From Macrostomum lignano (taxonomy: Eukaryota): 64,000 nucleotides of DNA. The DNA is taken from assembly GCA_002269645.1 (NCBI GenBank), contig NIVC01001713.1, positions 124,001 through 188,000 of the forward strand, written 5' to 3'. The notes beneath the pieces were generated by a model. The model was not told where the DNA came from and made no database searches. It saw only the letters and a program-made list of their open reading frames with translations. Within the stretch, counting starts at the first letter, position 1; every line of letters begins with the position of its first letter. Of the stretch, positions 24,291 through 64,000 are shown one piece after another. A program made the translations under genes and the position numbers.

Positions 24291-24721
24291 CAGTGACGGT
24301 GCAGTGTTGAAGTGTAAAATCAGCTATTATGATATTTCAATTGTCACATTCAGTAAAAAATTTATTAATTATTCAGAGCGCGCATCTCGTTTTGCATCTG
24401 CAGTCGCATCATCCAAATAAAAGAGGCTGCGGAGGCTCCGTTCCATTTTATAAAAGTGGAAATCAATTCAGTCGGGAAAAATGAGAATTTAATGGAATCC
24501 CGTATCAGTTTTGCATCTCAATAAGGGATTGAATTTTAATGCATTTTGCTAGAATTTTAAACTGAAAGTAGCCCCCTATTGAATGTTGAATTTTTTCTGG
24601 ATTTATTCAACCAAGTCCTTGAATATTTAAGTAAGGATGATTTTTTATAATTATCTTCTTTATGACATAATTGCTAATGAGTGCGGCGCAGCGGCCACTT
24701 CTGTTGAATAATTAATTGAGA

Positions 24722-27700: not shown

Positions 27701-28660
27701 TGTGAGGATGCAGAGATGAGAGGGTGTGAGGATGCAGAGATGAGAGGGTGTGAGGAGACAGAGATGAGAGGATGGGAGAGGAGACATAGATGCGGGGGTG
27801 AGAGGAGACAGAGATTCGGGGGAGAGAGGAGACAGAGATGAGAGGGGAGAGAGGAGACAGAGATGAGAGGATGGGAGAGGAGACAGAGATGAGAGGATGG
27901 GAGAGGAGACAGAGATGAGAGGGTGTGAGGATGCAGAGATGAGAGGGTGTGAGGATGCAGAGATGAGAGGGTGTGAGGATGCAGAGATGAGAGGGTGTGA
28001 GGAGACAGAGATGAGAGGATGGGAGAGGAGACAGAGATGCGGGGTGAGAGGAGACAGAGATTCGGGGTGAGAGGAGACAGAGATGAGAGGGGAGAGAGGA
28101 GACAGAGATGAGAGGATGGGAGAGGAGACAGAGATGAGAGGATGGGAGAGGAGACAGAGATGAGAGGGTGGGAGAGGAGACAGAGATGCGGGGGTGAGAG
28201 GAGACAGAGATTCGGGGAGAGAGGAGACAGAGATGAGAGGGAGAGAGGAGACAGAGATGAGAGGATGGGAGAGGAGACAGAGATGAGAGGATGGGAGAGG
28301 AGACAGAGATGAGAGGGTGTGAGGAGACAGAGATGTGAGGGTGAGAGGAGACAGAGAAGAGAGGGTGGGAGGAGACAGAGATGAGAGGGTGAGAGGAGAC
28401 AGAGATGAGAGGGTGGGAGGAGACAGAGATGAGAGGGTGAGAGGAGACAGAGATGAGAGGATGGGAGGAGACAGAGATGAGAGGGTGAGAGGAGACAGAG
28501 ATGAGAGGGTGGGAGGAGACAGAGATGAGAGGATGGGAGGAGACAGAGATGAGAGGGTGTGAGGATGCAGAGATGAGAGGGTGGGAGAGGAGACAGAGAT
28601 GAGAGGATGGGAGGAGACAGAGATGAGAGGGTGTGAGGAGACAGAGATGTGAGCGGAGAG
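24722..28660 (+). repeat. GA-rich minisatellite, 26-28-bp variants of GAGGAGACAGAGATGAGAGGATGGGAGA, with higher-order blocks
   Basis: Tandem units; source of the spurious 1390- and 1226-aa ORFs. Confidence 0.95.
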
Positions 28661-29195
28661 AGAAGACAGGTGAGAGGGGGGAGAAGAGACATGTAAGAGG
28701 GGGACAGAGGAGACAGGTGAGAGAGGGAGATATGAGAATGCGTGACTGAGCCGCGGTGAGATACAGAGGCCAAACACGAGAGTCTGAGGTAGATGACGTA
28801 TTCCGCCATCAAATGCGGCCAGCAGAGAATTCTCTGGCACTCCCACAGCCAATCAAAGAGCGGCATCCAGTCTCGCACCGGCAACTTCCCAGGGGACTTT
28901 CATTCTCAATTCCAGTTAAAATTGAAGTCAAACTAGACTTGAAGATTTTCACGCTTCTTCGACTTCCGCCACCCTTCCAGAAGCAGTATCTCAGCTCTCC
29001 ACCTCGGGTTCTCAAGGCAAGTGTCAAAGGATTCATTCATTTGCATACGATTTGCACTGCACACTCGCGTTCTACGGCTTACTATGCGTTTTGTCTGCTC
29101 GGCACGGCGAATTTAGAAAAGGATTGAAAATGTCCCTGGCCTCGTTTAACCTTTGCTTTGATCGGTTATTCAGTTTATCATGCGTTTTTTGTCCA

Positions 29196-29845
<650 letters not shown>

Positions 29846-30124
29846 CGACAGTCGGTTGGGTATTAATATGCCCTTTTCTATGATTTTTCTGTGATTATTG
29901 TTTATCTGTTTACAAAACTGGAACGAAATAATTTCAGAGAATTATGGAGTGATTTTTTAAATGACGCTACAAGTAACACTGGGTGCGGTTTTTGCCAACG
30001 GAATTGATTGATTAACGGCTCTGAGAAAGGCTAGTTGAAATTTGAATATTTAATTTTTTAAAAATTGGAGCAATTTATCGAAGGGATGGAGCGAGAGGAG
30101 GAGAGAGGGGAGCGGCAGGGAATA

Positions 30125-31910: not shown

Positions 31911-33939
<2,029 letters not shown>

Positions 33940-34546
33940 TGCGCACTGGGCCTGGGACCTCTGCCACGTGACGCTCGATGCCAAGAGCAGTTTCAATAAG
34001 ATAATGATGTTTACGAAGCAAACAATTAAAGCTGCAGCTGGTATCAAAGTAGTACATTTTAAATACGCTCGTACTGCAACACTACCTTGTAAGAGATCTA
34101 GGAGGACATTAACATCTAAAGTAGACTCTCACATGAGCAGTGAATCTAAATAGAATACGACCGTATGCCAGCAGAAAAGTGCAAGCAAATCTGCTTACAA
34201 GTTGCACGCTGAAAATCAATTCCAACTTGATGTTATTATCCTGCCTAATTCCTTTCCTGAATATATACATACTACATAATCAAAATCGGGCTTATCAATA
34301 AACTAATTCTTGTACATAAATTTTAAGTGATTCGTCTAAGTCAGAAAATCTGTTAGATAGGACATTCTGTATTAATGAGCCTGGTTTACGTCACATCAGT
34401 CTGTTTATTTTACCACCAGTAAAGTTCGAACCTGAAAATAAGGAGGAATATTATATGCAAACATGCTATTGTATAAATACATGTATTTGGCGTGAAATAC
34501 GGTGGTATATTATGTAGAAACGGTAGAAACGGTGGTGAAAACTAAC

Positions 34547-40733
<6,187 letters not shown>

Positions 40734-40904
40734 GGCTGCGGCTGGGACAAATTTTTATTTAAGTTAAACTGAATTCAATTTTCAGCTTTGTATTTCTGCT
40801 TGCTAAACTTACTTTTTTAATATGGCAGGAGATTCTTCTCAATGACAGTATGGTCTCTGTCTGCTTATAAATTTGACTTTTCCTGAACCAACGGTTTCCC
40901 TTGG

Positions 40905-41690
40905 ATACGGGATTTCCCTTGAATACGGGATTTCCCTTGGCGATGGGATTTCCCTTGGCGATGGGATTTCCCTAAGAGGACTGGATATCCTTTAGCGACG
41001 GGATTTCCCTTAGCGAAGGGAGTTCCCTAAGAGGACTGGATATCCTTTAGCGACGGGATTTCCCTTAGCGAAGGGAGTTCCCTAAGAGGACTGGATTTCC
41101 CTTAGCGACGGGATTTCCCTAAGAGGACTGGATATCCTTTAGCGACGGGATTTCCCTAAGAGGACTGGATTTCCGTTAGCGACGGGATTTCCCTTAGCGA
41201 AGGGAGTTCCCTAAGAGGACTGGATATCCTTTAGCGACGGGATTTCCCTAAGAGGACTGGATTTACCTTAGCGACGGGATTTCCCTTAGCGAAGGGATTT
41301 CCCTAAGAGGACTAGATTTCCCTTAGCAAAGGGATTTCCCTTAGCGAAGGGATTTCCCTAAGAGGACTAGATTTCCCTTAGCGAAGGGATTTCCCTAAGA
41401 GGACTAGATTTCCCTTAGCTACGGGATTCCCCTAAGAGGACTAGATTTCCCTTAGCTACGGGATTTCCCTAAGAGGACTAGATTTCCCTTAGCAAAGGGA
41501 TTTCCCTTAGCGAAGGGATTTCCCTAAGAGGACTAGATTTCCCTTAGCGAAGGGAGTTCCCTAAGAGGACTGGATTTCCCTTAGCGACGGGATTTCCCTA
41601 AGAGGACTGGATATCCTTTAGCGACGGGATTTCCCTAAGAGGACTAGATTTCCCTTAGCTACGGGATTTCCCTAAGAGGACTGGATTCCC
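40905..41690 (+). repeat. Minisatellite built from GGGATTTCCCTTAGCGA and CCCTAAGAGGACTGGATTT modules
   Basis: Direct. Confidence 0.9.
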
Positions 41691-42779
41691 CTTTGTAGGG
41701 CATACACTGCACTCTCGACTAAACTTTTTATTTTTCTTACCTAGTTTCGACCAATCATGCATCACTTCCCCCACCCCCGATATTGACTAACAAATTTTTG
41801 AGCAGACAATGCCATACAGAGACCACCTTTTTCGGCACTCTAACGTTCCATAAAAATATGTTTAAATCCAGGCAAACAGACTATCTAGATGCTAGCTGAA
41901 TGAGTAGCTGTAGTTGAACACAGGTCAGTCAGTCAAGAGACGACAATCTGTTTCAATAGTGTCTTGGTATCCAATTCCTGCGATTTTTATGGTCTATCTA
42001 CTTTCTCTTGTATTTACGCAGACTCAGCTTGGAAGACAAAATATTTGATCTATTGTTAACAAAAAACATTAGCTCAGGTAGATTTCCTCTCAGAAAAGCA
42101 CTGCGATTAATTATCGGAAAAATCTTTTTCTTTAACAAGTTTCTCGCGATATTAATATTAATTTTTCTTCGTTGTTGCGTATCAGCCTACTGCCGTGAGT
42201 AGAAATGTTCAGAAAAAGTCGTCCCTTTTTGGTTTCTTCTCCCGGAATATTAATCGAATTTACTTTTCGCGTTTTTATTTCTTTATTTCTTATGATTTGT
42301 TAATTTTTGAACATTTTTAAAAAAGAGAAGGTTGATTTTCAACAATCACAGCTCAGTTGTATTAAAACGCTGCTTGTTGTGCCCTAGTTTGAGTGACTGC
42401 ACAACCGCCTTCAAATTTGCATTAATTAACTTTCTAATTGACTGACTACTCAAACAGAATATGGATCTGCAGCCACTGTTATCTATTTGTCTCTAATTAC
42501 TATTTATTGTCTTCTGTGTTCTGCGATTATATATCTATATACTTGTATGATCTATCCATGAATATTTATGACAATGACTATCATTTCCTAACTTGATGCA
42601 TATAAATTCTTTTTTGATGTGAAAAATACTAAATAATATTTTTAATACACTGCTATAGAATTTTGCCTGCGCTGGGCCGCCGGTCAGGTGAAATATTATT
42701 GAAATTTCCTAAAAATAAAATGAATTTTTCAGTACAGCTGTGTTCTATGAACTGATGAGAACTCGGAGAGGTCCCTTGC

Positions 42780-43420
42780 AGTTGCCACCTTCCCCCACCT
42801 CCAGTGGCTGCCACCCTCCCCACCTCCAGTGGCTGCCACCCTCCCCACCTCCAGTGGCTGCCACCCTCCCCACCTCCAGTGGCTGCCACCCTCCCCACCT
42901 CCAGTGGCTGCCACCCTCCCACCTCCAGTGGCTGCCACCCTCCCCACCTTCAGTGGCTGCCACCCTCCCCACCTCCAGTGGCTGCCACCCTCCCCACCTC
43001 CAGTGGCTGCCACCCTCCCCACCTCCAGTGGCTGCCACCCTCCCCACCTTCAGTGGCTGCCACCCTCCCCACCTTCAGTGGCTGCCACCCTCCCCACCTT
43101 CAGTGGCTGCCACCCTCCCCACCTTCAGTGGCTGCCACCCTCCCACCTTCAGTGGCTGCCACCCTCCCCACCTTCAGTGGCTGCCACCCTCCCCACCTCC
43201 AGTGGCTGCCACCCTCCCCACCTTCAGTGGCTGCCACCCTCCCCACCTTCAGTGGCTGCCGCCCGATCCCCACCTTCAGTGGCTGCCACCCTCCCCACCT
43301 TCAGTGGCTGCCACCCTCCTCACCTTCAGTGGCTGCCACCCTCCCCACCTCCAGTGGCTGCCACCCTCCCCACCTTCAGTGGCTGCCACTCTCCCCACCT
43401 CCAGTGGCTGGCACCCTCCT
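42780..43420 (+). repeat. 22-bp minisatellite CCCCACCTCCAGTGGCTGCCACCCT-type
   Basis: Direct. Confidence 0.95.
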
Positions 43421-44020
43421 TACCATTTAAAACTAAATCTTAAATTATAATCTTAGAATCTCATAGATCATAAATCTTATTACAGACATATCTTTAAGTC
43501 TAACTTGGGATCTGTTGCATTTAGACAGACATTTTCACTAATTTGTTTACAATTTTGTTTAGTATACTTATAAAGCACAAATTAGCTCTACTCCTAATAT
43601 CAGGAGTCTTTGAAGTTACCAGTATATAATTTTAAGGATCGCATTAATAATGAGCCAAACTATGCCAAAAACTGATCAGTGCTTTAATTCGCACTTTATC
43701 GAATAAACAAACTTTTAGGATACCAACTTATTAACAAAATTTTGTTGTCTAAAATGAATAGCTTGCACCATTATAAGCTCCAATTTATCACTTTTGAGTT
43801 GCATTGCAGAAATAAAATAATTTCAACCTAACGAAGCATTGCTGAGTGCTTAAACTTAATTATGCTTGCTGTTTATATTTGGTAAAACTGATCAGCAAAG
43901 AGAGCTGTGTAAATTTTACCCTCAACACTAAACAACAATGTGGTCAAGAGTCAGAGTTCAGAATCCGGTCAGTCATTGTCTATGAAGCGACATCGATCTC
44001 AGATGCAGCGGAGAGCTCAT

Positions 44021-48977: not shown

Positions 48978-49108
48978 CTAGAAATGCAGTAGAAATGCAG
49001 TTTCTTATGTAAACACAGTCCTACAAATAAAGATTCTTAGAAACGTTTCCTAGAAATGCAGTTTCTTATATAAACACAGTCCTACAAATAAATATTCTTA
49101 GAAACGTT
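48978..49108 (+). repeat. 61-bp AT-rich satellite, left part (~2 units), target of the pPolB element
   Basis: Unit TTCTTAGAAACGTTTCCTAGAAATGCAGTTTCTTATATAAACACAGTCCTACAAATAAAGA; continues at 58615. Confidence 0.9.
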
Positions 49109-50019
49109 ACTACTAAGGACCCATTTATGGCTTGATTTTGGAGGTGAGGTGGGTGTCAACCCTCCTCGCCTCTCATTGGCTGGCGCCCCGATCACTAGGT
49201 GATCGATACCCGTATCGATATCGGCGCTCGGCGCGCGCGCGCCGCAGGCGCGTGGCGCCAAGCGCCGTCCAGCCGCAGGCGACCCTCCCCAGCCACCGGC
49301 GACCCTCCCCAGCCGCAGGCGCACCTACCGATATGTATGCTCACCCTACCGACATGTACCCCGATATGTACACCCTCCCGAGCCGCAGGCGCACCCTCCC
49401 GAGCCGTAGGCGCCCATGCGGCAGACGCCCATGCCGCAGACGCCCATGCCGCAGACGCCCATGCCGCAGGCACCCCGAGTGTACACTCTACCGAGCCGCA
49501 GGCACCCCGAGTGTACACTCTACCGATATGTACACTCTACCACTCTCCCGATATGTAGTCAACGATATTAGGCTAGTGAAAACTACTTATAGTAGGTGAA
49601 ATTGAGTATATTTACATAAAAATGTAGATAAAACATATTGGTAGGTGAATAATGACGCATATTGCATATTAAAATGTACATATTGGAGCATATGAGCAGC
49701 AAAAACACACAATGTAGGTGTATGGGCAGAAATAGACAAAGCAGGTACTGTAGGCGCTACATAGGTGGAAATACACACAGCAGGTTTACAAAGTGAACTT
49801 TCGATACATATCGGATTAATGTATAAAGCAGGTTTACAAGGCATGCATAAGGTGTAGTTGTATAATACAGGCACGCATGTATAATCAGATTATAGGCAAA
49901 CGCCCAGGTGCAACAGACGCGTAAATAATGTCGCACCGACTAAAGAGTAAATATTGTCTAACCCGCAGGTGCATAAATATTAAACAAAAGCGGTTCGGGG
50001 AAATCCCAAAAGGGAGGTT
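49109..50019 (+). repeat. Left terminal inverted repeat (911 bp)
   Basis: Reverse complement of 57704-58614. I saw only two mismatches, both near the inner end. Confidence 0.95.
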
Positions 50020-50332
50020 TTAGCCGCCCGTTTTCGCCACCGCCGCCGCCGCCCTAACCCTCTTATAGGTACAATTGCGTTGAAAGTATTTCGAGTCATT
50101 AGGTTGTAATGACCCTCCATATTTTAGGTGGGTGGACTCGAGCCCGGGGCCAGCCCATTTCAGTTTTTTGGGCCGGCCCCTCTGCCAATTTCCTCCCTAG
50201 GAGCGAGCTATCAGAATTGGTCTTTTAACCCCCGTGTATACACACATAGAGGCCCCCAGCTAGCGCCCATTCTAACCTACCCAGTGTACAGTGTTGGGTT
50301 CCCCAAACCGCGTACAAAGAGAAATACCCTTA

Positions 50333-51347
50333 TCAGTCAATCTCCATACGCTCCCTCAGGGCTGTCTCGTACGCGGCCTCTTCCTCCACGCTCTCGAAGC
50401 AGTAGTCGGATGACTGGCAATGTGGAAATTATAACAGTCAATGCAGATAGAATATATGCAAGGTATATGATTAGATGAGTTGTGTATATAATGTAATATC
50501 TTACCAAATCTAAATCGTCCTCCAGCCGCCACAGACGTAAAGACGCTGTATAGCGCACCAACGAAAGGTGCTCCTCCCAGTTGGAGGGCCATGCGGCGGG
50601 CTCATCCCACGCGGTTGGCCGCGCTCCCGGACCGGCCAGGTACGCCTCAGAGTCGGGGGCATACGAATTGCGCCCCATCAACCAGTCCTGGTGCAGAGTC
50701 TCAGCCTCCAACACCTCCCGTAGGCCGGCACCCCTCGCAACCAAAGTATCAAGAACCCGATTAAAGGCTCTGACAAAGGTAGCTTGGGAGGGCAGCCCGC
50801 CAGGATGCCGAGACCTCAGCCAGTCAATGTCCCCGCGGAAAAATGAGGCCACAATGCGAGGAAAGCGCTCACGAACCACGGCGATCTCCTCAGACATATC
50901 CTCGTCCTCGTCGTCGAAGAGAAGGAGCGTAGCGGCTGATGATATTGAGGCCCGGTGGGAGGTAGTTGAAGCAGCAGCAGAGACGGGCGTAGTAGAGGCG
51001 GCAGCAGCAGAGACGGGCGCAGCAGAGGCAGGGCCGGTTGTGGTCAGCTCCTCAACAGAGACGTCAAAGAGGGCGGCTGAGGCGGTAGTCAAATCGGAGG
51101 CAGTAGCAGCAGGGGCACCGTTCACAACCCCGCCGATAGCCAGCAGCGGGAGGTCAAAAACTTCAGACTCGGTGTCGCTATCATAGGACATAGCCCAAGC
51201 TAGATATTGATCAGCCTCCCAATTATCAGTTCCGTTGTTTTCAGTGCCTAGGGGAACTATGTGTTCAGGGATATCCCCGTCGAGGCTGGTTAACTCTTCA
51301 GTCGGGCGATTATTATCCCAGAGGTTGGATAGAGCTCGGCGGGACAT
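50333..51347 (-). CDS. Orphan acidic protein, ~307 aa, one intron; complement(join(50333..50413,50505..51347))
   Basis: Long ORF. Donor TTG|GTAAGA at 50504 and acceptor TTGCCAG at 50414 replace a hydrophobic read-through tail with SSDYCFESVEEEAAYETALRERMEID*. TATATAA box at 51421-51427. Confidence 0.7.
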
Positions 51348-51420
51348 GCTAGAATCAACAGAGAGTAAAGTATTAGAGCTGAGATAGGGTTTGACTCTCT
51401 GGAGAGGGGGGAAACACTAA

Positions 51421-51427
51421 TTATATA
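51421..51427 (-). promoter_or_regulatory. TATA box for the orphan gene
   Basis: TATATAA about 75 bp upstream of the ATG at 51347. Confidence 0.45.
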
Positions 51428-51463
51428 GACGGATCGAGTGAGGCGGTGCGAACCAATAGGAAA

Positions 51464-51996
51464 CTAGCAGTCCCAACCCTCGTTAAACAGATTTTCCCAG
51501 GGTGGAGATTGGTAGGGTTTGAGACCCATGAGCTGAAGAACATCCACCTCAGTCCCGGCTACCGGAGGCGTGTCTGTCTTGACTCGCTTGGCTGGAGGGG
51601 GTGCCTCAGGTGCCGGCTTGAAGAGCTTGTCCAAACGGGCGGCAAACATCCGGCGCCACAGTTCAGGCGTGAATTCGATCGTGTAGCGCCAATTAAACTT
51701 TGGGTCCTGATTGAGCCAATTGCGCAGCAAACGGATCCTCCCTCGCGAAGCTTCAACTGCCTTGAAATTGCCCAACAGGACCCGCTTGTTCACGTGAAGG
51801 CGGGCAGCAGCCTCCAGGTCAGGGCGCGCGCTTCGAGCTTCTTCCACTCTGGCTCGGCCAAGTAGATTGCAGGGAAGCCGTCCTTCCACACTCCGGCCTC
51901 GTTGGTGTAGAGACGCCGAATTTCAATCAAGTTGTGTTCAGTTTCAAATGTGGGCTTCCGCGCCACAAAGTTTTCGTATAGAGAGATAGAAGACAT
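51464..51996 (-). CDS. Tandem PC4-like ssDNA-binding protein, ~177 aa (one apparent 1-bp deletion near 51830)
   Basis: Repeat 1: LIEIRRLYTNEAGVWKDGFPAIYLAEPEWKKLEA(A)RPDLEAAAR vs human PC4 [44 protein letters not shown]. Repeat 2: VLLGNFKAVEASRGRIRLLRNW...TIEFTPELWRRM. Restoring one base gives 534 nt. Confidence 0.65.
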
Positions 51997-52041
51997 GATT
52001 TAGCAGCAGCAGCAGAGAGCTCTCTGACAGCCGTGCAGCGC

Positions 52042-52164
52042 CTTATATACCCCCGGTGGAGGGTGGGGTGGGTGATGATTTTGGGGTGATTTTTGATGAT
52101 TTTGGTTGGTTTTTGGCGATTTATCCAATAACAGGCGAGCTGAGCAGATTTTTTAGTATATATA
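52042..52164. promoter_or_regulatory. Compact divergent Pol II promoter: TATATAAG (minus, 52042-52049) and TATATATA (plus, 52157-52164)
   Basis: Each box lies about 45-70 bp upstream of the PC4-like ATG (51996) or the pPolB ATG (52235). Confidence 0.55.
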
Positions 52165-52234
52165 CAGACCCCCAGAGCCAGGGTAGAGAGATAAATCCTT
52201 CTCTCTCCGCTCTCTCACGCTCTCTGTTTGCAAA

Positions 52235-55200
52235 ATGGCTAAACGCAGCGCCGCAGCAACTGCTTTCCTGGCTGACAAGAGGCAACGTCTTTATGGTAAG
52301 TTTTAATTAATTTCTGTCTAGACTGTAGTTGCTAGGGTGGGGGTAGGGGCTGAGCAGCAGCAGCAGCTGCAGGGTCTGTGGGACCGCAGAGTAAACAACA
52401 AAGACTGCTGCGACAGCTGCAGGGGTCTAGACTGGAGTTGCTAGGGTGGGGTGCTGCGGCAGGGTCTGTAACAGAGAGTTGCAGGGGAGGGCTAGACAAG
52501 TTTCAGCCGGGTGTGTGCTGATAAGAAATTGCTGCTAGGGGGGTGTTGTCCAGACAGGCTGCAGCTGGGGTGCAAATTGCTGCGACAGAGAGTTGCAGGG
52601 GTGAGTAAACAAAGACTGGGGTGGGGTGTTGTCTAGACAGGGAGGGGTGTGCTGATAAGAAATTGCTGCAAAAACAGACAGTTGCTAGGGTGCTGCGGCA
52701 GATAAGAAATTGCTGCAGAATCGTTGGGGCAGGCTAGACAAGTTACAGCCAGGTGGGGGCAGAGAGTTGCTGGGACTGTGTAGCGCGGGGACAGACTGAT
52801 AAGAAATTGGCAGGGGCGCTACCCAGACAGGCTGCAGCTAGGTGCAAATTGCTGCGACAGAGAGTTGCAGGGGTGAGTAAACAAAGACTGCTGCGACAGG
52901 CTGCAGCGGGGGTGCAGATAAGAAATTGCAGAGAGTTGCTGCGGGGACAGCAGAGTAAACTCTGTTAAGAAATTGCTGGGGCTAGGGCGGGGAAACACGC
53001 TGGGGCCAGGAAAATGACAGATTCTTCTGGTTTTTTATCTCCTTGTGTTTTTTCAGACGCGTTTGTCCCGCCAACACAGCCGGAATCTGTTACCGGACCG
53101 GGTGAGTTATCCAGCCCCCCATTTCCCACACAGACCCTAGCTGACTCACACTCCCCCATTCCCCCCATGCAGGTTTTACGGCCCGGCTGGATAATCAGCG
53201 TGACCTGCCCAAGTTTAGGGCAAAGGGTGTCGAGTATGTGGTGCATATTACCAACACCGAAGATTTGCGGGAGGTGTTTGCTGACATGCTCGAAGTTTTC
53301 AAGCAAGATTTGGCTGGTGATGACTTTATGGCCGCGAAATTCGAGAGCGACAATATGCTCAAAGCGGCCCACACTCCCCCGGTGCGTGCATCCCGCATGA
53401 CGGCTGAATTGTTGTTTAAGCACATCAACAAGATTGTACAGTCGGATGCCACTGTCCTGACGGGCAACTTTTCTATCCGGTTGCTAAAGGCCTGGGTGCC
53501 TCGAGGTGGATGTGCTCTCGAGAACAAGCATCTAGAAGAGCGACACGCCTTCTCCAAGCACTATGTCCGCATCACCAACTCGGACAAGAGATGCCTGCTG
53601 CGCGCTCTGGTCGTGGCCTGCGCCTACCTGCAATTCGTGGCCAAGTCCATCACCAAGCAGGTGTGGCACACAATCAAGGCCAATTCGCCCACGCAGACTA
53701 AGCTGGTGGCTGAGCTACAAATCGAAGCGGGTCTCTACTCGGTAAGTTGTGTACTGATAAGAATTTTTACACAGTATCATGGAATACTAATATTTTCTGA
53801 TAAGATTTTTACGATAAGGAATACTAAAAGAATTTTTACACAGTATCATGGAGTACTAAAAGATATATTTTCTGATAAGATTTTTACACAGTATCATGGA
53901 ATACTAAAATTTTCTGATAAGAAATTTTACGATAAGGAATACTAAAAGAAATATTTTACCCTCCACACAGACTCTTCAAACCGTCTCGCAGGCTGGTCCT
54001 TTCGGCGTGGATGCACTGCCCGAAGCGATCCGTGCCCTGAACCGGCTGCATCCGGGGCACGATTTTGGTGTACGCGTGTACCGCGCAGAGGAGGCCAACA
54101 GGTGCATCTTCAACCTGCCTGGCACCGAGATTCTGCACCTGCACCTGGTCGAGCAGCACTTTAATGTGGTTACCAAGCTGCCTGCGTTTTTCGGCTCCGT
54201 GCGCTACTGCCCCAAGTGCGAGATGGCCTACGACTGCGCCAACGCCAAGCACAAGTGCGCGATGCCTGCAGTACATGCAAGACTCCGGGCTCCAACTGTA
54301 AGGCAAACCGCGCATATGTAAGATGCCATGATTGCGGGCTAAATTGCTATAATGCTCAGTGCCTAGAAAATCACAAGCGCAAGAATAAGGCCGGCAGATC
54401 GCGCTGTGATTCGGTCCACGTTTGCGGCACGTGTGGCTATCTAGAAGAACTAAAAGTAGGCCAGCCCCCTGAGCATCAGTGTGGTTACGCCAAGTGCCCA
54501 GTCTGCAAGCAGTACGACGAAACTGCCACCCACGAGTGCTTTGTCACCCCGCCCAAAGCCAAAGAGTCTAGCGCCCCGTATGTTTACTATGATTTCGAGA
54601 CGTACGTGGACTCTGGCAAGCAGCACCGGGTACACTTGGTTACGGCTGCCACCTCCTGCGAGGCGTGTCCCAAACTCTTCCCCAGGCCCCGCTGCAGCGT
54701 GTGCGGGGGACTACACAGCTCAGCCAATTGCATTGCGGGACGCGATTTGGCACTCGATTTCACGAGCTGTGTCTCGCACAATGACTGTGCCTGTGGGATG
54801 CGAGAGTTTGTATCTGTCGGGCCGCACTCTATCGATGCCTTTTACTGCTGGCTGACTAGTGTGTTCAAGCAGGGGGCAATTGCTATTGCGCACAATGGCT
54901 CTGCGTATGACGCATTCCTCCTGCTCGGCGCCCTACTCAACGGACTGGCCAAGAAGAAGCCGCAAGTGATCTTCCAGAACAGCCGCCTAATGTATATGAA
55001 GTGCGACAAGATCACCTTCAAGGACAGCCTCAATTTCATCCCTATTGGTCTGGCGCAATTCCCAAAGGCGCTTGGTTTGGGCACCCAACTGACCAAAGGA
55101 GATTTCCCGCACGTGTTTAACCAGCCACAAAATTGGGGGTACGTGGGACCCTACTGCTCAATTGATATGTATGGAGGAAAGAAAAACAAGCAGCACGACT

Positions 55201-57346
55201 CCATCGCAGACTGGCTGGCCAAGCAGGAGGGACAGGTGTTTAATTTCAATAAGGAGTACCTGGACTACTGCCTGCAGGACACGTTAATTTTGCGGGAAGG
55301 CTGTCTGAAATATACCCGCCTGATTAAGGACATTTGCGGACTGGACGCATTTGTCAATCCAACACCATTGCGGGCTTGGCTATGGCTGTTTTCACCACCA
55401 AGTTTATGGAGCCCAACACTCTTGGGGTGATTTCCCGCCGGTCCGATGTACAGTCGCACAAGGCGCGGTGCTGGCTGGCACATTTAAATGCAACCGAGTT
55501 TGGCGGCCGGTTGCGGACAGCGGACTCGGGCGGCGAGGCTTTCGCCATGGGCCGTAAGGTCGACGGCTTCGACCCAGAGACCAGGACAGTGCTGCAGTTT
55601 CATGGCTGCTTCTTCCATGGCTGTCCCAAGTGCTTCCCCAACGGCGACGTGCTGCACCCGCTCAAGAACCAGCCAATGCGGGCGATTTATGAGGAGACTG
55701 AGCGCTTCACCCGGTTGCTCTCCACTGCATACAATGTGCGTGTTCTGTGGGAGCACGACTATCAGGACGAGGGAGCGCCAGTCCAGCAGCCTATTCGCCT
55801 GGAGGATGCCCTGTTTGGCGGCCGTACCGAGGCTTTTGTCCCGCATGCCGAGGCCACCGAGACTGTAGAGCTGCGCTATCGGGATGTGGTAAGTTTGTAC
55901 ACTTGTACACACAGTTGACATGCGTTTGAGTTTATCTTATCCTCTAATTCTCTATTATCCTTATCCCCTAGGTGTCGCTCTACCCGACTGTCAACAAGTT
56001 TGACAAGTACCCTGTCGGGCACCCGGTTCACCACCCCGAGCCTCATCTACTGGATGAGCAGCAGCTGGCCCGGTATTTTGGCATCGCCGAGGTGTCGATT
56101 CTGCCGCCAACCAATCTCCACATCCCGCTACTGCCCGCCAAGATTAACAAGAAGCTGGTTTTCGGCCTCTGCCGCGTCTGCATGGAGACCCAGTGCAGCA
56201 GCGAGTGTACACACACTGACGCTGAGAGAATGCTCCGCGGCACGTGGTCGACCCCAGAGCTCCACAAGGCCCTGCAGTTGGGTTACAAGCTGCAGTCAGT
56301 TCATGCCCTGGCCTATTGGACCGAGACTCGCACGGGCCTGTTTGCAGATTATGTAAACACCTTTTTGAAGCTCAAAGCCGAGTCTAGCGGTTCGCCGGGG
56401 ATGGCTGAGGACGCCAAGGCTGCCTACATGGCCAGCTTTTTCGAGCGCGAAGGCGTCCGGCTGGAAAAGGTGGAGGAGAATCCTGGCCTGCGCTTTGTTG
56501 CCAAGATTTTTCTAAACTCGTAAGTTTTTCTACTTGCAGTGGGGGGCCATGTTTTTCTACTTACATAAAATTTATTTTTCCCCTGCAGGCTCTGGGGCAA
56601 ATTCTGCCAGCGCGACGACCTGACCTCCACAGAGATTGTGGACAGCTACGAGGCGTGGCTGCAGCGCCTGACCGACCCCTCGATCAAGGTCAAGTCGTGC
56701 GAGCCAATTGGGGAGAGCTTCATGATGCTCGAGTACAAGCCCCGATTTGGCGGTGCTGGCGAGCGGGCGTTCAAGTACGCTAATGTGCCTATTGGCGTTT
56801 TCACCACCTCCCACGCCCGGCTGCGACTCTACGAGGCTCTGGAGGGCCTAGGAACCCGAGTCATTTACGCCGATACTGATTCGTGAGTAATTTTTTCAAC
56901 TGTCTCTGTCTCTCTTTCTCCCCTTAACACTTTATTCTCCTCCTCCTCCCAGGGTTGTATACCGCTGCTCACCGGGCGAGTACGAGCCTCCGGGCGGTTC
57001 GAGTTTGGGGCAGTGGACTGACGAGGTACCTGCTGGCTGCCGCATGGTACAGTTCACCACGGGAGGCCCCAAGCTCTACCGGTACGTGGTGGAGAAGCCT
57101 GACGGGTCGCTGTACTCGGTGCTCAAGTGCAAGGGCATCAGAGTCACCCCCGAGATTTCCGAGCGCGAGGACGAGCTGCAGGAAATTCTGCGTCACGGCG
57201 GGACTGTACGCCTGCCCCAGGCCCAGTTCAGGCGCGATAAGGCTAGCTGTACAATCCGGACCCTCGAGATGGACAAGACTTTCCAGCGCGTAATGACTAA
57301 GAGGGTGTATGGGGCTGCTAGCCGCCCGTATGGCTTTCGGGAGTGA
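52235..57346 (+). CDS. polB: Protein-primed family B DNA polymerase (Polinton type), ~1269 aa, 7 exons: 52235..52295, 53057..53101, 53173..53741, 53992(or 53971)..55888, 55972..56519, 56589..56882, 56953..57346
   Basis: ExoI YYDFET, ExoII HNGSAYD, ExoIII YCLQD, FGGRTE, motif A RDV|VSLYP, motif B KIFLNS|LWGKF, motif C YADTDS|V, KxY/KCKG. All six introns are GT-AG and phase-consistent. Two 1-bp deletions (near 54258 and 55355) restore a 3810-nt frame. Confidence 0.92.
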
Positions 57347-57703
57347 GTGAAAGATAAGGATCTGTCTTTGCACGCCTGGGATTCCCCTATGTGCCCACTT
57401 GGGATCCCTTGACTCGTGGGGATGAAAATGGTTTTACGCCCGCACTGTACTTAGGGGTCCTTACTCATTTGGCGCCTCCACTGTACATTGAGCGGGATCC
57501 CCTCAAGTGTTAAAACTCCCATTTGACACCTATTCCCTCGGGGCGGTTTGTGGCCCAGCGGTCCGCCTCTTGGAGTAGAACTCCTGACATGAACTTGCTG
57601 CGCTGGTTAGCGTACTGATAGCGCAATCGAAATACGTTGTCCATTTTTCTAGCCCACTTGTGGGTTTAATTGTGTTGAAAGTATATCGGGTCATTAGGCC
57701 GTG

Positions 57704-58614
57704 AACCTCCCTTTTGGGATTTCCCCGAACCGCTTTTGGTTAATATTTATGCACCTGCGGGTTAGACAATATTTACTCTTTAGTCGGTGTGACATTATTT
57801 ACGCGTCTGTTGCACCTGGGCGTTTGCCTATAATCTGATTATACATGCGTGCCTGTATTATACAACTACACCTTATGCATGCCTTGTAAACCTGCTTTAT
57901 ACATTAATCCGATATGTATCGAAAGTTCACTTTGTAAACCTGCTGTGTGTATTTCCACCTATGTAGCGCCTACAGTACCTGCTTTGTCTATTTCTGCCCA
58001 TACACCTACATTGTGTGTTTTTGCTGCTCATATGCTCCAATATGTACATTTTAATATGCAATATGCGTCATTATTCACCTACCAATATGTTTTATCTACA
58101 TTTTTATGTAAATATACTCAATTTCACCTACTATAAGTAGTTTTCACTAGCCTAATATCGTTGACTACATATCGGGAGAGTGGTAGAGTGTACATATCGG
58201 TAGAGTGTACACTCGGGGTGCCTGCGGCTCGGTAGAGTGTACACTCGGGGTGCCTGCGGCATGGGCGTCTGCGGCATGGGCGTCTGCGGCATGGGCGTCT
58301 GCCGCATGGGCGCCTACGGCTCGGGAGGGTGCGCCTGCGGCTCGGGAGGGTGTACATATCGGGGTACATGTCGGTAGGGTGAGCATACATATCGGTAGGT
58401 GCGCCTGCGGCTGGGGAGGGTCGCCGGTGGCTGGGGAGGGTCGCCTGCGGCTGGACGGCGCTTGGCGCCACGCGCCTGCGGCGCGCGCGCGCCGAGCGCC
58501 GATATCGATACGGGTATCGATCACCTAGTGATCGGGGCGCCAGCCAATGAGAGGCGAGGAGGGTTGACACCCACCTCACCTCCAAAATCAAGCCATAAAT
58601 GGGTCCTTAGTAGT
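57704..58614 (-). repeat. Right terminal inverted repeat (911 bp)
   Basis: Reverse complement of 49109-50019. Confidence 0.95.
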
Positions 58615-59410
58615 AACGTTTCCTAGAAAAACAGTTTCTTATATAAACATAGTCCTACAAATAAAGATTCTTAGAAACTTTTCCTAGAAATGCAGTTTCT
58701 TATATAAACACAGTCCTACAAATAAAAAATTCTTAGAAACGTTTCCTAGAAAAGCAGTTTCTTATATAAACATAGTCCTACAAATAAAGATTCTTAGAAA
58801 CTTTTCCTAGAAATGCAGTTTCTTATATAAACACAGTCCTACAAATAAAAAATTCTTAGAAACGTTTCCTAGAAAAGCAGTTTCTTATATAAACATAGTC
58901 CTACAAATAAAGATTCTTAGAAACTTTTCCTAGAAATGCAGTTTCTTATATAAACACAGTCCTACAAAAAAAGATTCTTAGAAACGTTTCCTAGAAATGC
59001 AGTTTCTTATATAAACACAGTCCTACAAATAAAGATTCTTAGAAACGTTTCCTAGAAATGCAGTTTCTTATATAAACATAGTCCTACAAATAAAAAATTC
59101 TTAGAAACGTTTCCTAGAAAAGCAGTTTCTTATATAAACATAGTCCTACAAATAAAGATTCTTAGAAACTTTTCCTAGAAATGCAGTTTCTTATATAAAC
59201 ACAGTCCTACAAATAAAGATTCTTAGAAACGTTTCCTAGAAATGCAGTTTCTTATATATAAACACAGTCCTACAAATAAAGATTTTTACAAACGTTTCTC
59301 AGATATGCAGTTTCTTACAAACACATTCCTACAAACAAAGATTCTTAGAAAGTTTCTTAGAAATACAGTTCATCTCTACAAATAAACATTTTTTGAAACG
59401 TTTCTTAGAC
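58615..59410 (+). repeat. 61-bp AT-rich satellite, right part (~13 units)
   Basis: Direct; resumes at the duplicated AACGTT. Confidence 0.95.
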
Positions 59411-59792: not shown

Positions 59793-60239
59793 TTTAGAAT
59801 TTGGATCGAAAAATATGATAGGAATTGAATTGAAAAATAAGATAAGTAGAATTAGAATGAAAAAGTAAAGATAGTCTGAGTGAGGGGTTGTGTGATAATT
59901 GACAAAGATAAGAAAATAATCATGACAAACATTTTAAACTCAGCGCACCACCGCCACCCCAAAAAGCTGTACACTATTCAGTGTTAATAAATGTACACTA
60001 AACGTAAATTCTCTCCAGCGCCCGCTGCTAATTGGTCAAGCTGCCCTTTAAAGCCAAAATTCTCCTTACAAAACTGCTAATAAAATGGTCAAAGTCAACA
60101 AGCAGCGATAAACAAATAGATGTGCAAATACTCGTGCACATTTTACACTCATCTTTTTTACCACAAAGTTGTTAGCAATGTTGCATTGAAAACTTTCAAT
60201 AAAAATCGCTTATTTATATGAAAGTCGCTCTCTGCAATG

Positions 60240-60865
60240 CAGTCTTGGTCTTGGTAATCCTTGGTTTATTAATAGCAATAATCTTTGGCTTCTTGTAATC
60301 CTTGGTTTATTAATAGCAATAATCCTTGATTAATCAAGTGCATTAATCCTTGGTTTATTAATAGCAATAATCCTTGGCTTATTGAGTGCAGTAATCCTTG
60401 GTCTGCCAAGAGCAATAGTCCTTGATTTAATCCTTGGTTTATTAATAGCAATAATCCTTGGCTTCTTGAGTGCAGTAATCCTTGGTTTGCCAAGAGCAAT
60501 AGTCCTTGGTTTATCGAGTGCAGTAATCCTTGGTTTATTAATAGCAATAATCCTTGGCTTATCGAGTGCAGTAATCCTTGGTTTATTAATAGCAATAATC
60601 CTTTAATAATCCAGTGCATTAATCCTTGGTTTATTAATAGCAATAATCCTTGATTAATCAAGTGCATTAATCCTTGGTTTATTAATAGCAATAATCCTTG
60701 ATTAATCAAGTGCATTAATCCTTGGTTTATTAATAGCAATAATCCTTGGCTTCTTGAGTGCAGTAATCCTTGGTTTGCCAAGAGCAATAGTCCTTGGTTT
60801 ATCGAGTGCAGTAATCCTTGGTTTATTAATAGCAATAATCCTTGGCTTATCGAGTGCAGTAGTCT
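60240..60865 (+). repeat. 24-bp minisatellite AATCCTTGGTTTATTAATAGCAAT and variants
   Basis: Direct. Confidence 0.9.
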
Positions 60866-60929
60866 AAGTGTTTTTATTTAGTCCTTTAATAAAAGCTTTT
60901 AATAAAAAAATTTACACTACTACTTTTAA

Positions 60930-62586: not shown

Positions 62587-63399
62587 CTGTTAATTCGGGT
62601 GGGGGGGGTAGGAAATCGATTTTAAAGTCTTTTCGATTCTGGAAACAATCTTGTCTTCAGCTTTTCTATATATCTCGAATCATCAACCGGGACACAATTT
62701 TTGAGGAAGTTTGTCGAAATCCTAATGGTAAAAAGGGATACGCTTCTATTTAGATGTAGATAGAGGAATTTTCCTGGTAATCTAGGCCTTCAAAAATTTT
62801 TTTGTGGTACCGCTCGGCCCGTCTCGATTTTCCCTATTATCGCTTATATAAAATCCCTAATCTCGCTTTTACTCTACTGATAGTAGCATAATGTGGCAAG
62901 CGCTCAAATTCTGTCTTTGAAATCATAAGTTAAAAAATGTAATTCAAAACCAATGTTGATTTTTAAAAAGTAGAGATAAAAAATTTCCTTTCTAACTAGT
63001 GAATGGGAGCGCTCTGTTTGAAACTAAATTTATGCCATTCATGCTCCCGGCATCTTAGCAACTTGAAAAGCTTGAACTTTCTTAATTTATTAACTAATCG
63101 CTTAACTCGTGCAGTAAACAGGACTGTTGGGACTTGCTAATTAACCTGGATAGAAACACCCAGAGTTACGTCTCAAGCCATGTGAAATGACACCTGATAC
63201 AAAACAAGTTGTTAAAGTTAAAAAAAGCTGTGTTCTCGTCTGTACGTGGCTAATTGGGACCCAAATTCGTGTAGCTATCAAGTTTGTCTAACCTATTTAA
63301 TTCTATCCAATAAACTTAATCCCATTCTCTGTGTACGATCCCCATTCGCGCGTATCTTCCCATGCATGATGCGACCAACTTAATCCTCATTCACCCAAT

Positions 63400-64000
63400 T
63401 CACTCCTGAGTCACCTAACTCATTCCCCATTCACACAACTCATTCCCCATTCACACAACTCATTCCCCATTCACACAACTCAGTCTCCATTCACACAACT
63501 CAGTCTCCATTCACACAACTCAGTCTCCATTCACACAACTCATTCCCCATTCACACAACTCATTCCGCATTCACAAAACTCAGTCTCCATTCACACAACT
63601 CATTCCCCATTCACCAAACTCACTCCCCATTCACCATACTCAGTCTCTATTCAACCAACTCACTCCCCATTCACACAACTCACTCCTCAGTCACCTAACT
63701 CTTTCCCCATTCACACAACTCAGTCTCCATTCACACAACTCAGTCTCCATTCACACAACTCATTCCCCATTCACACAACTCATTCCCCATTCACACAACT
63801 TTTTCCCCATTCACACAACTCAGTCTTCATTTACACAACTCAGTCTCCATTAACCAAAGTCAGTCTCTATTCACACAACTCACTCCCCATTCACCCAACT
63901 CAGTTCCCATTCACTAAAGTAAGTCTCTATTCACCCAACTCACTCCCCATTCACCAAACTCACTCCCCATTCACCATACTCAGTCTCTATTCACCCAACT
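63400..64000 (+). repeat. 20-bp minisatellite CATTCCCCATTCACACAACT / CAGTCTCCATTCACACAACT
   Basis: Direct; intronic in the iGluR-like gene. Confidence 0.95.

What the first reader, a model, noticed from the sequence alone, without database searches (positions are those of the whole stretch)
49103..58620. Minimal self-replicating pPolB element: TIRs and 6-bp TSD but no integrase, ATPase, protease or capsid
Seen: 9,506 bp, 911-bp near-identical TIRs, exact AACGTT duplication, and only three genes (spliced pPolB, tandem PC4-like SSB, orphan), each with a TATA box, filling the interior. Established: Polintons/Mavericks are typically about 15-20 kb or more and encode pPolB, a retroviral-type integrase (6-bp TSD), an A32-like ATPase, an adenain protease and jelly-roll capsids. 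Inference: a replication-competent but integration- and packaging-dependent unit, either a satellite or linear-plasmid-like parasite of a helper Polinton or a stable reduced lineage. The near-identical TIRs and intact TSD suggest recent insertion using an integrase in trans.
Basis: partly seen in the sequence, partly recalled or inferred. Interest (0 to 1): 0.95.

Follow-up and report, generated by a model that had tools for sequence, protein, structure and literature searches.

The report
Short integrase-less Polinton derivative in flatworm
A 9.5-kb mobile element recently inserted into satellite DNA of the flatworm Macrostomum lignano keeps only the self-copying DNA polymerase of a Polinton/Maverick-type virus-like transposon plus two small unknown genes, so it probably depends on full-length relatives for insertion and packaging.

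Summary
The structure is real. The element spans 49109-58614 (9,506 bp), with 911-bp terminal inverted repeats (TIRs; 2 mismatches) and an exact 6-bp duplication of AACGTT. Neighbouring 61-bp satellite units supply the uninterrupted empty site. The host is Macrostomum lignano (99% protein match).

The interior holds a spliced protein-primed polymerase (pPolB) with all catalytic motifs and a weak Vsr-nuclease-like insert. A divergent leftward unit encodes a small protein with only sub-threshold PC4 similarity and a true orphan. No integrase, ATPase, protease, capsid or PLA2 is detectable in the 64 kb.

As assembled, three single-base frameshifts interrupt this copy: two in pPolB and one in the small gene. 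They may be assembly errors.

The nearest pPolB relatives (42-48% identity) include metagenomic contigs with rve+chromodomain integrase, A32-like ATPase and adenain, so the polymerase is Polinton/adintovirus-type. Two other short TIR-bounded pPolB elements turned up: L003 (9,678 bp, 6-bp duplication) and L072 (5,930 bp, pPolB only). All three have a trinucleotide reiteration at their tips. At least 21 M. lignano protein models match the three genes.

Verdict: a non-autonomous, replication-module-only Polinton derivative. Recurrent loss of everything but pPolB is the interesting part. Trans-mobilisation is inferred, not shown.

The parts
48990..49102 (.). Left flank: 61-bp satellite units into which the element inserted
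   Evidence: Direct-repeat family D3. The sequence was read.
49103..49108 (.). Left copy of the 6-bp target-site duplication AACGTT
49109..50019 (+). Left terminal inverted repeat, 911 bp. The terminus reads 5'-ACTACTAAGG (a trinucleotide reiteration). It holds GC-rich 15-, 20- and 32-bp internal tandem repeats, and a CCAAT-type motif in inverse orientation at nt 62-71.
   Evidence: 2 mismatches in 911, no indels.
50054..50103 (.). 50-nt sequence just inside the left TIR. It recurs in DIRECT orientation just inside the right TIR (82% identical). Unexplained.
   Evidence: Family D10.
50333..51347 (-). Orphan gene. It has an acidic, Ser/Ala/Thr-rich first half and a helical second half. One 91-nt AT-rich GTAAG..CAG intron (50414-50504) precedes a short acidic terminal exon. 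It may also be joined to the SSB-like exon by splicing (acceptor before 51247).
   Evidence: Sequence read. An exhaustive phmmer search of 1.84 billion representatives found only 5 hits, all paralog models at 82-96% identity. There is no Pfam or PHROG hit. The AF2 model had pLDDT 34.
51464..51996 (-). Small gene with weak PC4-like similarity, a candidate ssDNA-binding protein. It is interrupted by one frameshift in this copy. A TATA-like sequence lies about 50 nt upstream, near 52045.
   Evidence: Pfam PC4 is sub-threshold. AF2 failed.
51997..52234 (.). Divergent promoter region between the leftward unit and pPolB. TATA sequences face both ways (about 52045 on the - strand, about 52156-52165 on the + strand).
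   Evidence: Read. Inference only; no expression data.
52235..57346 (+). [quoted passage not shown] Introns lie at 52296-53172 (possibly holding a 47-nt mini-exon at 53057-53103), 53742-53970, 55889-55971, 56520-56588 and 56883-56952. The gene is interrupted by two single-base frameshifts in this copy and has no in-frame stops within exons.
   Evidence: Pfam DNA_pol_B_2 hits on three ORF pieces. Motifs were read: ExoI DFETY, ExoII HNGSAYD, ExoIII YCLQD, A DVVSLYPT, B KIFLNSLWGKF, C YADTDS and KxY GPKLYRY. Relatives share two intron positions.
53175..54560 (+). pPolB N-terminal region. It is conserved across relatives, with OTU-like Cys-box and His-box motifs followed by a Cys-rich zinc-finger-like stretch. 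It is a candidate terminal-protein/priming region (inference).
   Evidence: Alignment. There is no significant Pfam or PDB support. An OTU domain is reported for adintovirus and bidnavirus PolBs in PMC8502044.
55400..55770 (+). Vsr-endonuclease-like insertion between the exonuclease and polymerase parts of pPolB (signature FHGCFFHGCPKC).
   Evidence: The profile of this region hits only the three Vsr endonuclease entries in the PDB, at E about 0.2. The signature occurs in 49 of 87 related loci, including integrase-linked ones. A Vsr insertion in marine nematode and mollusc Polinton pPolB2 is described in PMC10748475.
57649..57698 (.). Second copy of the 50-nt direct repeat, 5 nt inside the right TIR
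   Evidence: Family D10.
57704..58614 (-). Right terminal inverted repeat, 911 bp
58615..58620 (.). Right copy of the 6-bp target-site duplication AACGTT
58621..59400 (.). Right flank: continuation of the 61-bp satellite array (about 13 units)
   Evidence: Families D2 and D3. The sequence was read.

Best explanation
This is a recently integrated, non-autonomous member of the Polinton/Maverick-adintovirus lineage in Macrostomum lignano, reduced to its replication module.

Gene content. It keeps long TIRs and a large pPolB. The pPolB has a conserved N-terminal region with OTU-like boxes and zinc-finger-like cysteines, a 3'-5' exonuclease, a Vsr-like nuclease insert, and a polymerase with all catalytic motifs. 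A divergently transcribed leftward unit encodes a small, possibly ssDNA-binding protein and an orphan acidic protein. Integrase and the whole virion module are gone.

Inferred mechanism:
- As a linear DNA, such an element would be copied by protein-primed strand displacement from both TIR ends. The ACT-ACT reiteration at the very tips is the kind of terminal repeat that sliding-back or jumping-back initiation needs.
- Insertion with a 6-bp duplication would use an rve-type integrase supplied by a full-length relative.
- Any cell-to-cell spread would need that relative's capsid.

Shown: the anatomy, the lineage of the polymerase, the absence of the other genes, the genuine TSD, the multi-copy and diverged state of the three genes in the species, and the recurrence of short pPolB-retaining TIR elements elsewhere.

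Inferred: replication mode, trans-integration, and the SSB and terminal-protein roles.

This particular copy, as assembled, has three frameshifts. It is either inactive or mis-assembled at those points.
For: - TIR, TSD and empty site.
- Host identity and multi-copy family.
- pPolB domains and motifs.
- Vsr-like insert: with PMC10748475.
- Relatives linked to rve+chromo integrase, A32-like ATPase, adenain and PLA2.
- No trace of those genes in the window.
- Other short elements: L003 (2250-11927, 9,678 bp, TIR about 490 bp, TSD AAAAGA) and L072 (3325-9254, 5,930 bp, pPolB only).
- Termini are ACTACT (window) and AGTAGT (L003, L072, and the right ends of L002, L004 and L005).
- pPolB always abuts the right terminus.
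- Intron positions are shared with 61-66% identical relatives.
- Polinton ranges of TIR 100-1,500 bp and TSD 5-8 bp: PMC10748475.
Against: - No helper Polinton with matching termini was found, because the host genome could not be searched.
- The window's termini (AC..GT) differ from those of L003 and L072 (AG..CT).
- Three frameshifts mean this copy cannot make full-length pPolB or SSB-like protein as assembled.
- The PC4/SSB and OTU assignments are below significance, and both structure predictions failed.
- L003 and L072 are themselves decayed (in-frame stops). The short elements could therefore be dead by-products rather than a successful strategy.
- L003 keeps different accessory genes (PLA2, c23), so the reductions look independent.
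Confidence: 0.6

Rival explanations
1. Dead-end deletion derivative. On this reading it is an accidental truncated product of a full Polinton whose TIR was regenerated from the surviving end. It has no biology of its own, and the apparent 'family' reflects polyploidy, segmental duplication and decay in a repeat-rich genome.
For: - This copy has three frameshifts.
- L003 and L072 also carry stops.
- L003 keeps exactly the pPolB-proximal gene order (c23-PLA2-x-pPolB) of a longer relative, L062. That is what a one-sided deletion would give.
- The window itself contains a 12.9-kb near-identical duplication, so large duplications do occur here.
Against: - Each of the three genes has diverged paralogs in M. 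lignano, at about 57-82% identity as well as near-identical ones. Recent duplication of one locus does not explain that.
- The genuine TSD inside a satellite unit shows transposition of the short form itself.
- Intron positions are conserved in 61-66% identical relatives.
Confidence: 0.22
2. Autonomous element with an unrecognised integration function. On this reading the Vsr-like nuclease embedded in pPolB, the pPolB N-terminal region, or the orphan protein makes the staggered 6-bp cut and joins the ends. No helper would be needed.
For: - Short pPolB-retaining elements recur (window, L003, L072), and L072 carries nothing but pPolB.
- Two of the three have 6-bp TSDs without any integrase gene.
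- The nuclease-like insert is conserved.
Against: - The same Vsr-like insert is present in relatives that also carry a normal rve integrase, so it is not a substitute for one.
- A 6-bp TSD is the known signature of the Polinton integrase.
- The orphan has no detectable fold or homologs.
Confidence: 0.08
3. Endogenised copy of a free linear replicon, either a linear-plasmid-like episome or a bidnavirus/bidnaparvovirus-like virus. On this reading it was captured at a staggered chromosome break, and the 6-bp repeat arose from fill-in repair.
For: - pPolBs of this lineage with N-terminal OTU-type regions also occur in bidnaviruses and monopartite 'bidnaparvoviruses' (PMC8502044).
- Relatives L003 and L004 carry a parvovirus-type PLA2 ORF.
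- The size of about 9.5 kb is small for a Polinton.
Against: - No parvovirus-type capsid, NS1/SF3 helicase or PLA2 is in the window.
- PLA2 genes are also normal in alpha adintoviruses.
- Spliceosomal introns and TATA promoters indicate a nuclear, chromosome-adapted element.
- An independent relative (L003) has the same 6-bp TSD length, which argues for an integrase rather than random break repair.
Confidence: 0.06
4. Assembly artefact, with genes collapsed or a chimeric join between two inverted partial copies.
For: The genome is extremely repeat-rich. Three single-base frameshifts suggest imperfect consensus quality.
Against: The TSD and empty-site logic is exact. Interior sequence is unique within the window. 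Independent short elements of like design exist in other assemblies.
Confidence: 0.04

Closest known systems
Polintons/Mavericks and adintoviruses (animal polintoviruses), specifically the pPolB group with a Vsr-nuclease insertion described from marine nematode and mollusc Polintons (Jeong et al. 2023, PMC10748475)
   Same: - Protein-primed PolB of the same clade.
- Long TIRs within the 100-1,500 bp range.
- A 6-bp TSD.
- pPolB placed next to one terminus.
- A Vsr-like insert.
- An N-terminal OTU-like region, as reported for adintovirus PolBs.
   Different: It has no rve integrase, A32-like ATPase, adenain, major or minor capsid, or PLA2X. It is 9.5 kb against 13-25 kb. The pPolB has 5-6 introns, whereas the metagenomic relatives have uninterrupted 1,345-1,634-codon ORFs. 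It carries lineage-specific accessory genes.
Transpovirons (about 7-kb linear TIR plasmid-like elements derived from polinton-like viruses by loss of the morphogenetic module; PMC5499653)
   Same: The evolutionary logic is the same. Both are small TIR-bounded dsDNA elements that kept a replication protein, lost capsid genes, and presumably ride on a helper. Both have a divergently oriented small gene next to the replication gene.
   Different: Transpovirons carry an SF1 helicase fused to an inactivated pDNAP and are tied to giant viruses. This element has an apparently active-type pPolB and no helicase, sits in an animal chromosome with a TSD, and has spliceosomal introns.
Non-autonomous DNA transposons (deletion derivatives mobilised in trans through shared TIRs)
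   Same: The integration enzyme is lacking, while the TIRs and the family's TSD length are retained.
   Different: Ordinary non-autonomous derivatives lose coding capacity at random or completely. Here, and in L003 and L072, the large polymerase gene is what is kept.
Mitochondrial and cytoplasmic linear plasmids of fungi and plants, and Bidnaviridae/'bidnaparvoviruses'
   Same: All combine pPolB and TIRs without a Polinton integrase or double-jelly-roll capsid. All are thought to derive from Polinton-like ancestors. Bidnavirus PolB also has an N-terminal OTU region (PMC8502044).
   Different: Those elements are extrachromosomal or encapsidated. They carry RNA polymerase or parvovirus-type genes, and have no TSD or nuclear introns. 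None of those genes is present here.

Membership tests
Polinton/Maverick | [quoted passage not shown] | tested here: met
   Pfam DNA_pol_B_2 hits above cut-off, and all Exo and Pol motifs were read. The nearest relatives are linked to rve integrase, A32-like ATPase and adenain. No formal phylogeny with reference sets was done; only a crude NJ tree.
Polinton/Maverick | Retrovirus-like (rve) integrase. [quoted passage not shown] | tested here: not met
   No rve hit on any ORF. tblastn with the integrases of L053 and L007 against the whole window gave nothing better than E 0.8. The orphan has no homologs and no confident fold.
Polinton/Maverick | TIRs of 100-1,500 bp and TSD of 5-8 (typically 6) bp | tested here: met
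   911-bp TIRs and a 6-bp TSD validated by the empty site. The ranges come from PMC10748475.
Polinton/Maverick | Virion module: double and single jelly-roll capsid proteins, A32-like ATPase, adenain protease | tested here: not met
   No Pfam hits. tblastn with the ATPase, protease and candidate capsid ORFs of L007, L053 and L055 gave only chance-level matches.
Polinton/Maverick | Size 13-25 kb | tested here: not met
   9,506 bp.
pPolB2-Vsr subgroup (Jeong et al. 2023) | Vsr endonuclease domain inserted in pPolB | tested here: inconclusive
   The only PDB hits of the insert profile are the three Vsr entries, but at E about 0.2. Pfam Vsr was not hit. The signature motif is shared with 48 related loci.
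Adintovirus-type PolB | N-terminal OTU cysteine-protease domain | tested here: inconclusive
   Cys-box and His-box are conserved in the alignment. There is no significant Pfam or PDB profile hit.
PC4/Sub1-like ssDNA-binding proteins | Match to the PC4 domain (PF02229) above the gathering score, or the PC4 fold | tested here: inconclusive
   13-14 bits against a cut-off of 25, at E 0.04-0.07, for the first half only. There is no hit for the second half and no internal repeat. The AF2 model is unusable, and the PDB profile search was empty.
Transpoviron | SF1 helicase fused to an inactivated pDNAP; association with giant viruses | tested here: not met
   No helicase domain. The pPolB catalytic motifs are intact. 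Giant-virus association is not testable here.
Bidnaviridae / bidnaparvovirus | Parvovirus-type capsid (with PLA2) and an NS1-type SF3 helicase alongside pPolB | tested here: not met
   No such Pfam hits. No PLA2 motif in any frame. tblastn with the PLA2 ORFs of L003 and L004 was negative.
Protein-primed linear replicon | Short nucleotide reiteration at the extreme termini, and a terminal protein | tested here: inconclusive
   The terminal ACTACT reiteration is present. AGTAGT is found in L003, L072 and the right ends of three further relatives. A terminal protein cannot be identified from sequence.

The most novel reading that the evidence does not exclude
Replication-module-only derivatives form a distinct, recurrent and evolutionarily persistent class of animal Polinton satellites, the animal counterpart of transpovirons. 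They keep their own pPolB because protein-primed replication acts preferentially on the genome that encodes it. They borrow integrase and capsid from full-length helpers. In M. lignano the class has diversified, acquired introns and picked up its own accessory proteins. A more radical variant is that they integrate without any rve integrase.
Probability: 0.3. Interest if true: 0.8.

Novelty: new variant of a known kind. Interest (0 to 1): 0.55.

Why it matters
Polintons are defined by polymerase plus integrase, and surveys usually count only integrase-linked pPolBs (PMC10748475 did so explicitly). Elements like this one are therefore invisible to them.

Short TIR-bounded elements that discard integrase and capsid but keep the 4-5-kb polymerase gene recur in different hosts. 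If that holds up, the polymerase acts in cis strongly enough to be selected even in a parasite of a parasite. That is a direct, testable clue to how Polintons replicate, which has never been observed.

It would also give an animal example of the reductive route (virus to capsid-less replicon) proposed for transpovirons and linear plasmids. In addition, it flags Platyhelminthes as hosts of the Vsr-bearing pPolB group.

Tried and rejected
- Fetching other genomic copies failed. Look-ups by exact protein for P0004, P0001 and the orphan ORF found no contigs, so no census of copies, TSDs or helpers in M. lignano was possible.
- The IMG/VR scan with the pPolB alignment found no relatives.
- Structure prediction of the SSB-like protein (via the intact paralog P0029) gave pLDDT 36, and that of the orphan gave 34. 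No fold search was run, because matches to such models are meaningless.
- PHROGs scans of the small proteins were empty.
- PDB searches with single sequences were empty. The profile of the OTU-like region gave only chance-level hits.
- BLASTP of the two halves of the SSB-like protein showed no repeat.
- A hidden PLA2, integrase, ATPase, protease or capsid remnant was considered and rejected.
- An alternative genetic code was considered as the explanation for the in-frame stops in L003 and rejected, because the stop types are mixed.
- Contigs L001 and L002 hold related pPolBs without TIR pairs and were uninformative about element length.
- Literature searches for Polintons in Macrostomum and for integrase-less or non-autonomous Polintons found nothing directly relevant.


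Full report
**1. The observation**

The repeat finder reports one long inverted pair in the window, with arms at 49095-50019 and 57704-58628. A base-by-base comparison gives 911-bp TIRs at 49109-50019 and 57704-58614, with 2 mismatches and no indels. Each TIR is flanked by AACGTT. Because that hexamer is a palindrome, the tool's arms run 14 nt longer than the true TIRs. The element is 9,506 bp.

The element lies inside an array of 61-bp satellite units. Joining its two flanks with a single AACGTT recreates the normal unit junction. That junction recurs at seven uninterrupted places at 3 or fewer mismatches in 36 nt. The 6-bp repeat is therefore a real target-site duplication, not a coincidence.

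No other copy or fragment of the element is in the window. Its G+C content of about 52-56% stands out from the 35-45% flanks.

**2. Host**

The longest polymerase ORF piece matches a UniRef protein of Macrostomum lignano at 99% identity. It also matches six more M. lignano proteins at 57-80%. The window is therefore from this free-living marine flatworm or a very close relative.

**3. Genes**

These were read directly from the sequence and checked against database paralogs.

(a) pPolB, + strand, 52235-57346.
- A TATATATA box lies about 75 nt upstream.
- Five short AT-rich introns have canonical GTAAGT/GTGAGT...AG borders: 52296-53172, 53742-53970, 55889-55971, 56520-56588 and 56883-56952. The long first intron may hold an in-phase 47-nt mini-exon.
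- Pfam DNA_pol_B_2 is hit above threshold.
- All catalytic motifs are present (ExoI-III; polymerase motifs A, B and C; KxY).
- Two relatives at 61-66% identity, from a JGI metagenome and an SRA assembly, have introns at exactly the same two positions flanking the motif-A-to-B exon. The introns are therefore old features of this lineage.

(b) A small gene on the - strand, 51464-51996, is transcribed divergently from pPolB.

(c) An ORF on the - strand, 50333-51347, has a 91-nt intron before a short acidic last exon.

Database gene models splice (b) onto (c) (P0033, P0035). In a second subfamily they splice (b) directly onto a similar acidic last exon (P0029, P0031, P0032). The left half may thus be one alternatively spliced unit rather than two genes.

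**4. State of this copy**

Relative to the paralogous proteins, this copy has three single-base frameshifts: two in pPolB and one in the small gene. There are no in-frame stops in the exons.

The two TIRs show only two substitutions between them, so three indels is rather many. Consensus errors in a long-read assembly are a real possibility. I cannot tell which explanation applies without reads. As assembled, the copy cannot encode full-length proteins.

**5. What the small proteins are**

- Only the N-terminal half gives a PC4 (PF02229) match. It scores 13-14 bits against a gathering score of 25, at E 0.04-0.07.
- The second half gives nothing, and the halves do not align to each other.
- The PDB profile search is empty, and the AlphaFold model is unusable (pLDDT 36).
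- An ssDNA-binding role fits a strand-displacement replicon, and the acidic tail fits too. It remains a hypothesis.

The orphan is a true orphan.
- A full HMMER pass over 1.84 billion representative proteins finds five hits, all paralog models at 82-96% identity.
- There is no Pfam or PHROG family and no confident fold (pLDDT 34).

**6. The polymerase lineage**

A pattern scan of metagenome contigs found 398 relatives. The 80 kept are 42-48% identical over the motif-A-to-B exon.

- Three of them (L007, L053, L055) carry, next to the pPolB, an rve integrase with chromodomain, an A32-like ATPase and an adenain-type protease. L055 also has a parvovirus-type PLA2 ORF, as do L003 and L004. This is the gene set of Polintons and alpha adintoviruses (PMC8502044).
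- The stretch between ExoIII and motif A aligns across relatives. As a profile it hits only the three Vsr endonuclease structures in the PDB, weakly (E about 0.2).
- Its signature (YEF-GC-WHGC--C) occurs in 49 of 87 loci, including the integrase-linked ones. This matches the Vsr-bearing pPolB2 subgroup reported from a marine nematode and molluscs (PMC10748475). That survey counted only integrase-linked pPolBs and did not list flatworms for pPolB2.
- The N-terminal region is conserved, with OTU-like Cys and His boxes and a Cys-rich stretch. It has no significant database support.
- In a crude neighbour-joining tree, the window and its two intron-sharing relatives form their own branch beside the integrase-linked groups.

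**7. What is missing**

Pfam scans of the element's ORFs and of the other large ORFs of the window show none of the following: integrase, ATPase, protease, capsid, PLA2, helicase. tblastn with those proteins, taken from the nearest full-length relatives, gives only chance-level matches anywhere in the 64 kb.

By the definition quoted in PMC5499653 (pDNAP plus retrovirus-like integrase), the element is not a Polinton. It is a Polinton derivative.

**8. Parallel cases**

L003, a Tara Oceans scaffold:
- It holds a complete element of 9,678 bp at 2250-11927 with about 490-bp TIRs, termini 5'-AGTAGTAATG and a 6-bp TSD AAAAGA.
- It contains a pPolB (decayed: four in-frame stops and at least one frame change), a PLA2 ORF and a few small ORFs. 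It has no integrase, ATPase, protease or capsid.
- Its c23-PLA2-x-pPolB order is that of the pPolB-proximal arm of a longer relative, L062.

L072:
- It holds a 5,930-bp element at 3325-9254 with about 160-bp TIRs (81% identical). It has the same AGTAGTA tips and nothing but a pPolB with one in-frame stop. No TSD is recognisable.

In L002, L004 and L005 the same kind of terminus lies 330-830 nt past the pPolB stop. pPolB therefore always abuts one end, as it does in the window.

Short pPolB-retaining TIR elements have thus arisen repeatedly in this clade. Every terminus found begins with a perfect trinucleotide reiteration, ACTACT or AGTAGT. Protein-primed polymerases need such a feature for sliding-back or jumping-back initiation; that is established for phi29-like phages and adenoviruses and is inference here.

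**9. Family size in the host**

Twenty-one M. lignano protein models match the element's three genes. They include near-identical and clearly diverged versions of each gene:
- pPolB down to about 57%,
- the small gene down to about 59-72%,
- the orphan at about 82%.

Some models join the small gene to the orphan. One odd model (P0001) joins the small gene to pPolB although the two lie on opposite strands in the window.

This points to a multi-copy, diversified family rather than a single accident. Protein models are a poor proxy for a genomic census, however, and the species has extensive duplication.

**10. Mechanism**

The best-supported reading is a non-autonomous element that keeps only the replication module.
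- Replication would be by protein priming at the TIR tips, with the pPolB N-terminal region or the orphan as candidate primer protein and the small protein as candidate SSB.
- Integration would be by a helper's rve integrase, which explains the 6-bp TSD seen here and in L003.
- Packaging, if any, would use a helper's capsid.
- Long, near-identical TIRs are what end-repair by copying the surviving terminus would produce in a truncated linear replicon.

None of these steps is shown.

The main rival is that such forms are dead by-products. A minor but more novel rival is helper-independent integration through the embedded nuclease. The same insert in integrase-bearing relatives argues against that.

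**11. Comparison and novelty**

The element works like a transpoviron does for polinton-like viruses, or like a non-autonomous transposon that has selectively kept its replicase. It fails the membership tests for Polinton (no integrase, no virion module), transpoviron (no helicase-pDNAP fusion), bidnavirus (no parvoviral genes) and linear plasmid (chromosomal, TSD, introns).

I found no paper describing integrase-less pPolB TIR elements in animals, nor Polintons in Macrostomum.

I rate it a new variant of a known kind and moderately interesting. Deletion derivatives are expected, this copy is interrupted, and the helper relationship is untested. The recurrence of pPolB-only forms does deserve a proper census.

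Noticed in passing
window 50054-50103 and 57649-57698: A 50-nt sequence (82% identical) lies just inside each TIR but in direct, not inverted, orientation. It is much more diverged than the TIRs themselves. It could be a footprint of how the TIR was regenerated, or a repeated regulatory site.
   Followed up: partly
L003 2250-11927 (Tara Oceans scaffold, ERZ28654820): A complete 9,678-bp TIR-bounded element with a 6-bp TSD (AAAAGA), a decayed pPolB, a parvovirus-type PLA2 ORF and no integrase or capsid genes. It is almost the same length as the window's element but has different accessory genes.
   Followed up: partly
L072 3325-9254: A 5,930-bp element consisting of about 160-bp diverged TIRs and a pPolB only. 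It is the most minimal form seen. No TSD is recognisable.
   Followed up: partly
L003 2280-2289, L072 3355-3364; window 49170-49179: A subterminal CCAAT-containing motif sits exactly 31 nt from the tip in both L003 and L072. The window has CCAATGAGAG in the opposite orientation at 62-71 nt. It may be an origin-auxiliary or host-factor site.
   Followed up: no
window 1-~5,000 and ~12,895-~18,000: A near-100% identical direct duplication with about 12.9-kb spacing. It includes 21-bp tandem arrays and a long low-complexity ORF with a C2H2 zinc-finger-like hit.
   Followed up: no
window 24700-28900, 29100-29900, 32100-34000, 38300-39900, 40850-41760, 42740-43520, 60200-60900, 63250-64000: There are many long tandem arrays with periods of 8, 10, 18-19, 20, 24 and 25 nt. 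Some have extreme GC and AT skew (GC skew up to 0.83 at 25-28 kb). Very long artefactual ORFs (up to 1,390 codons) run through them.
   Followed up: no
protein P0001 (UniRef A0A1I8HNU1, M. lignano): One gene model joins the SSB-like protein, part of pPolB and an acidic terminal exon. In the window the SSB-like gene and pPolB are on opposite strands. This implies a rearranged copy or a mis-assembly in the annotated genome.
   Followed up: no
window 52300-52960 and 53760-53960: The first two pPolB introns are filled with their own short repeats. One is a recurring GATAAGAAATTGC motif with about 50-nt direct repeats. The other is a 48-nt tandem repeat.
   Followed up: no
L011, L012, L016, L020, L027, L030, L032, L033, L035, L045: These metagenomic relatives carry uninterrupted pPolB ORFs of 1,345-1,634 codons. 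A small RING-finger-like ORF lies about 2 kb upstream on the opposite strand in several, and no other recognisable Polinton gene is on the contig. They may be further integrase-less forms or just contig fragments.
   Followed up: partly
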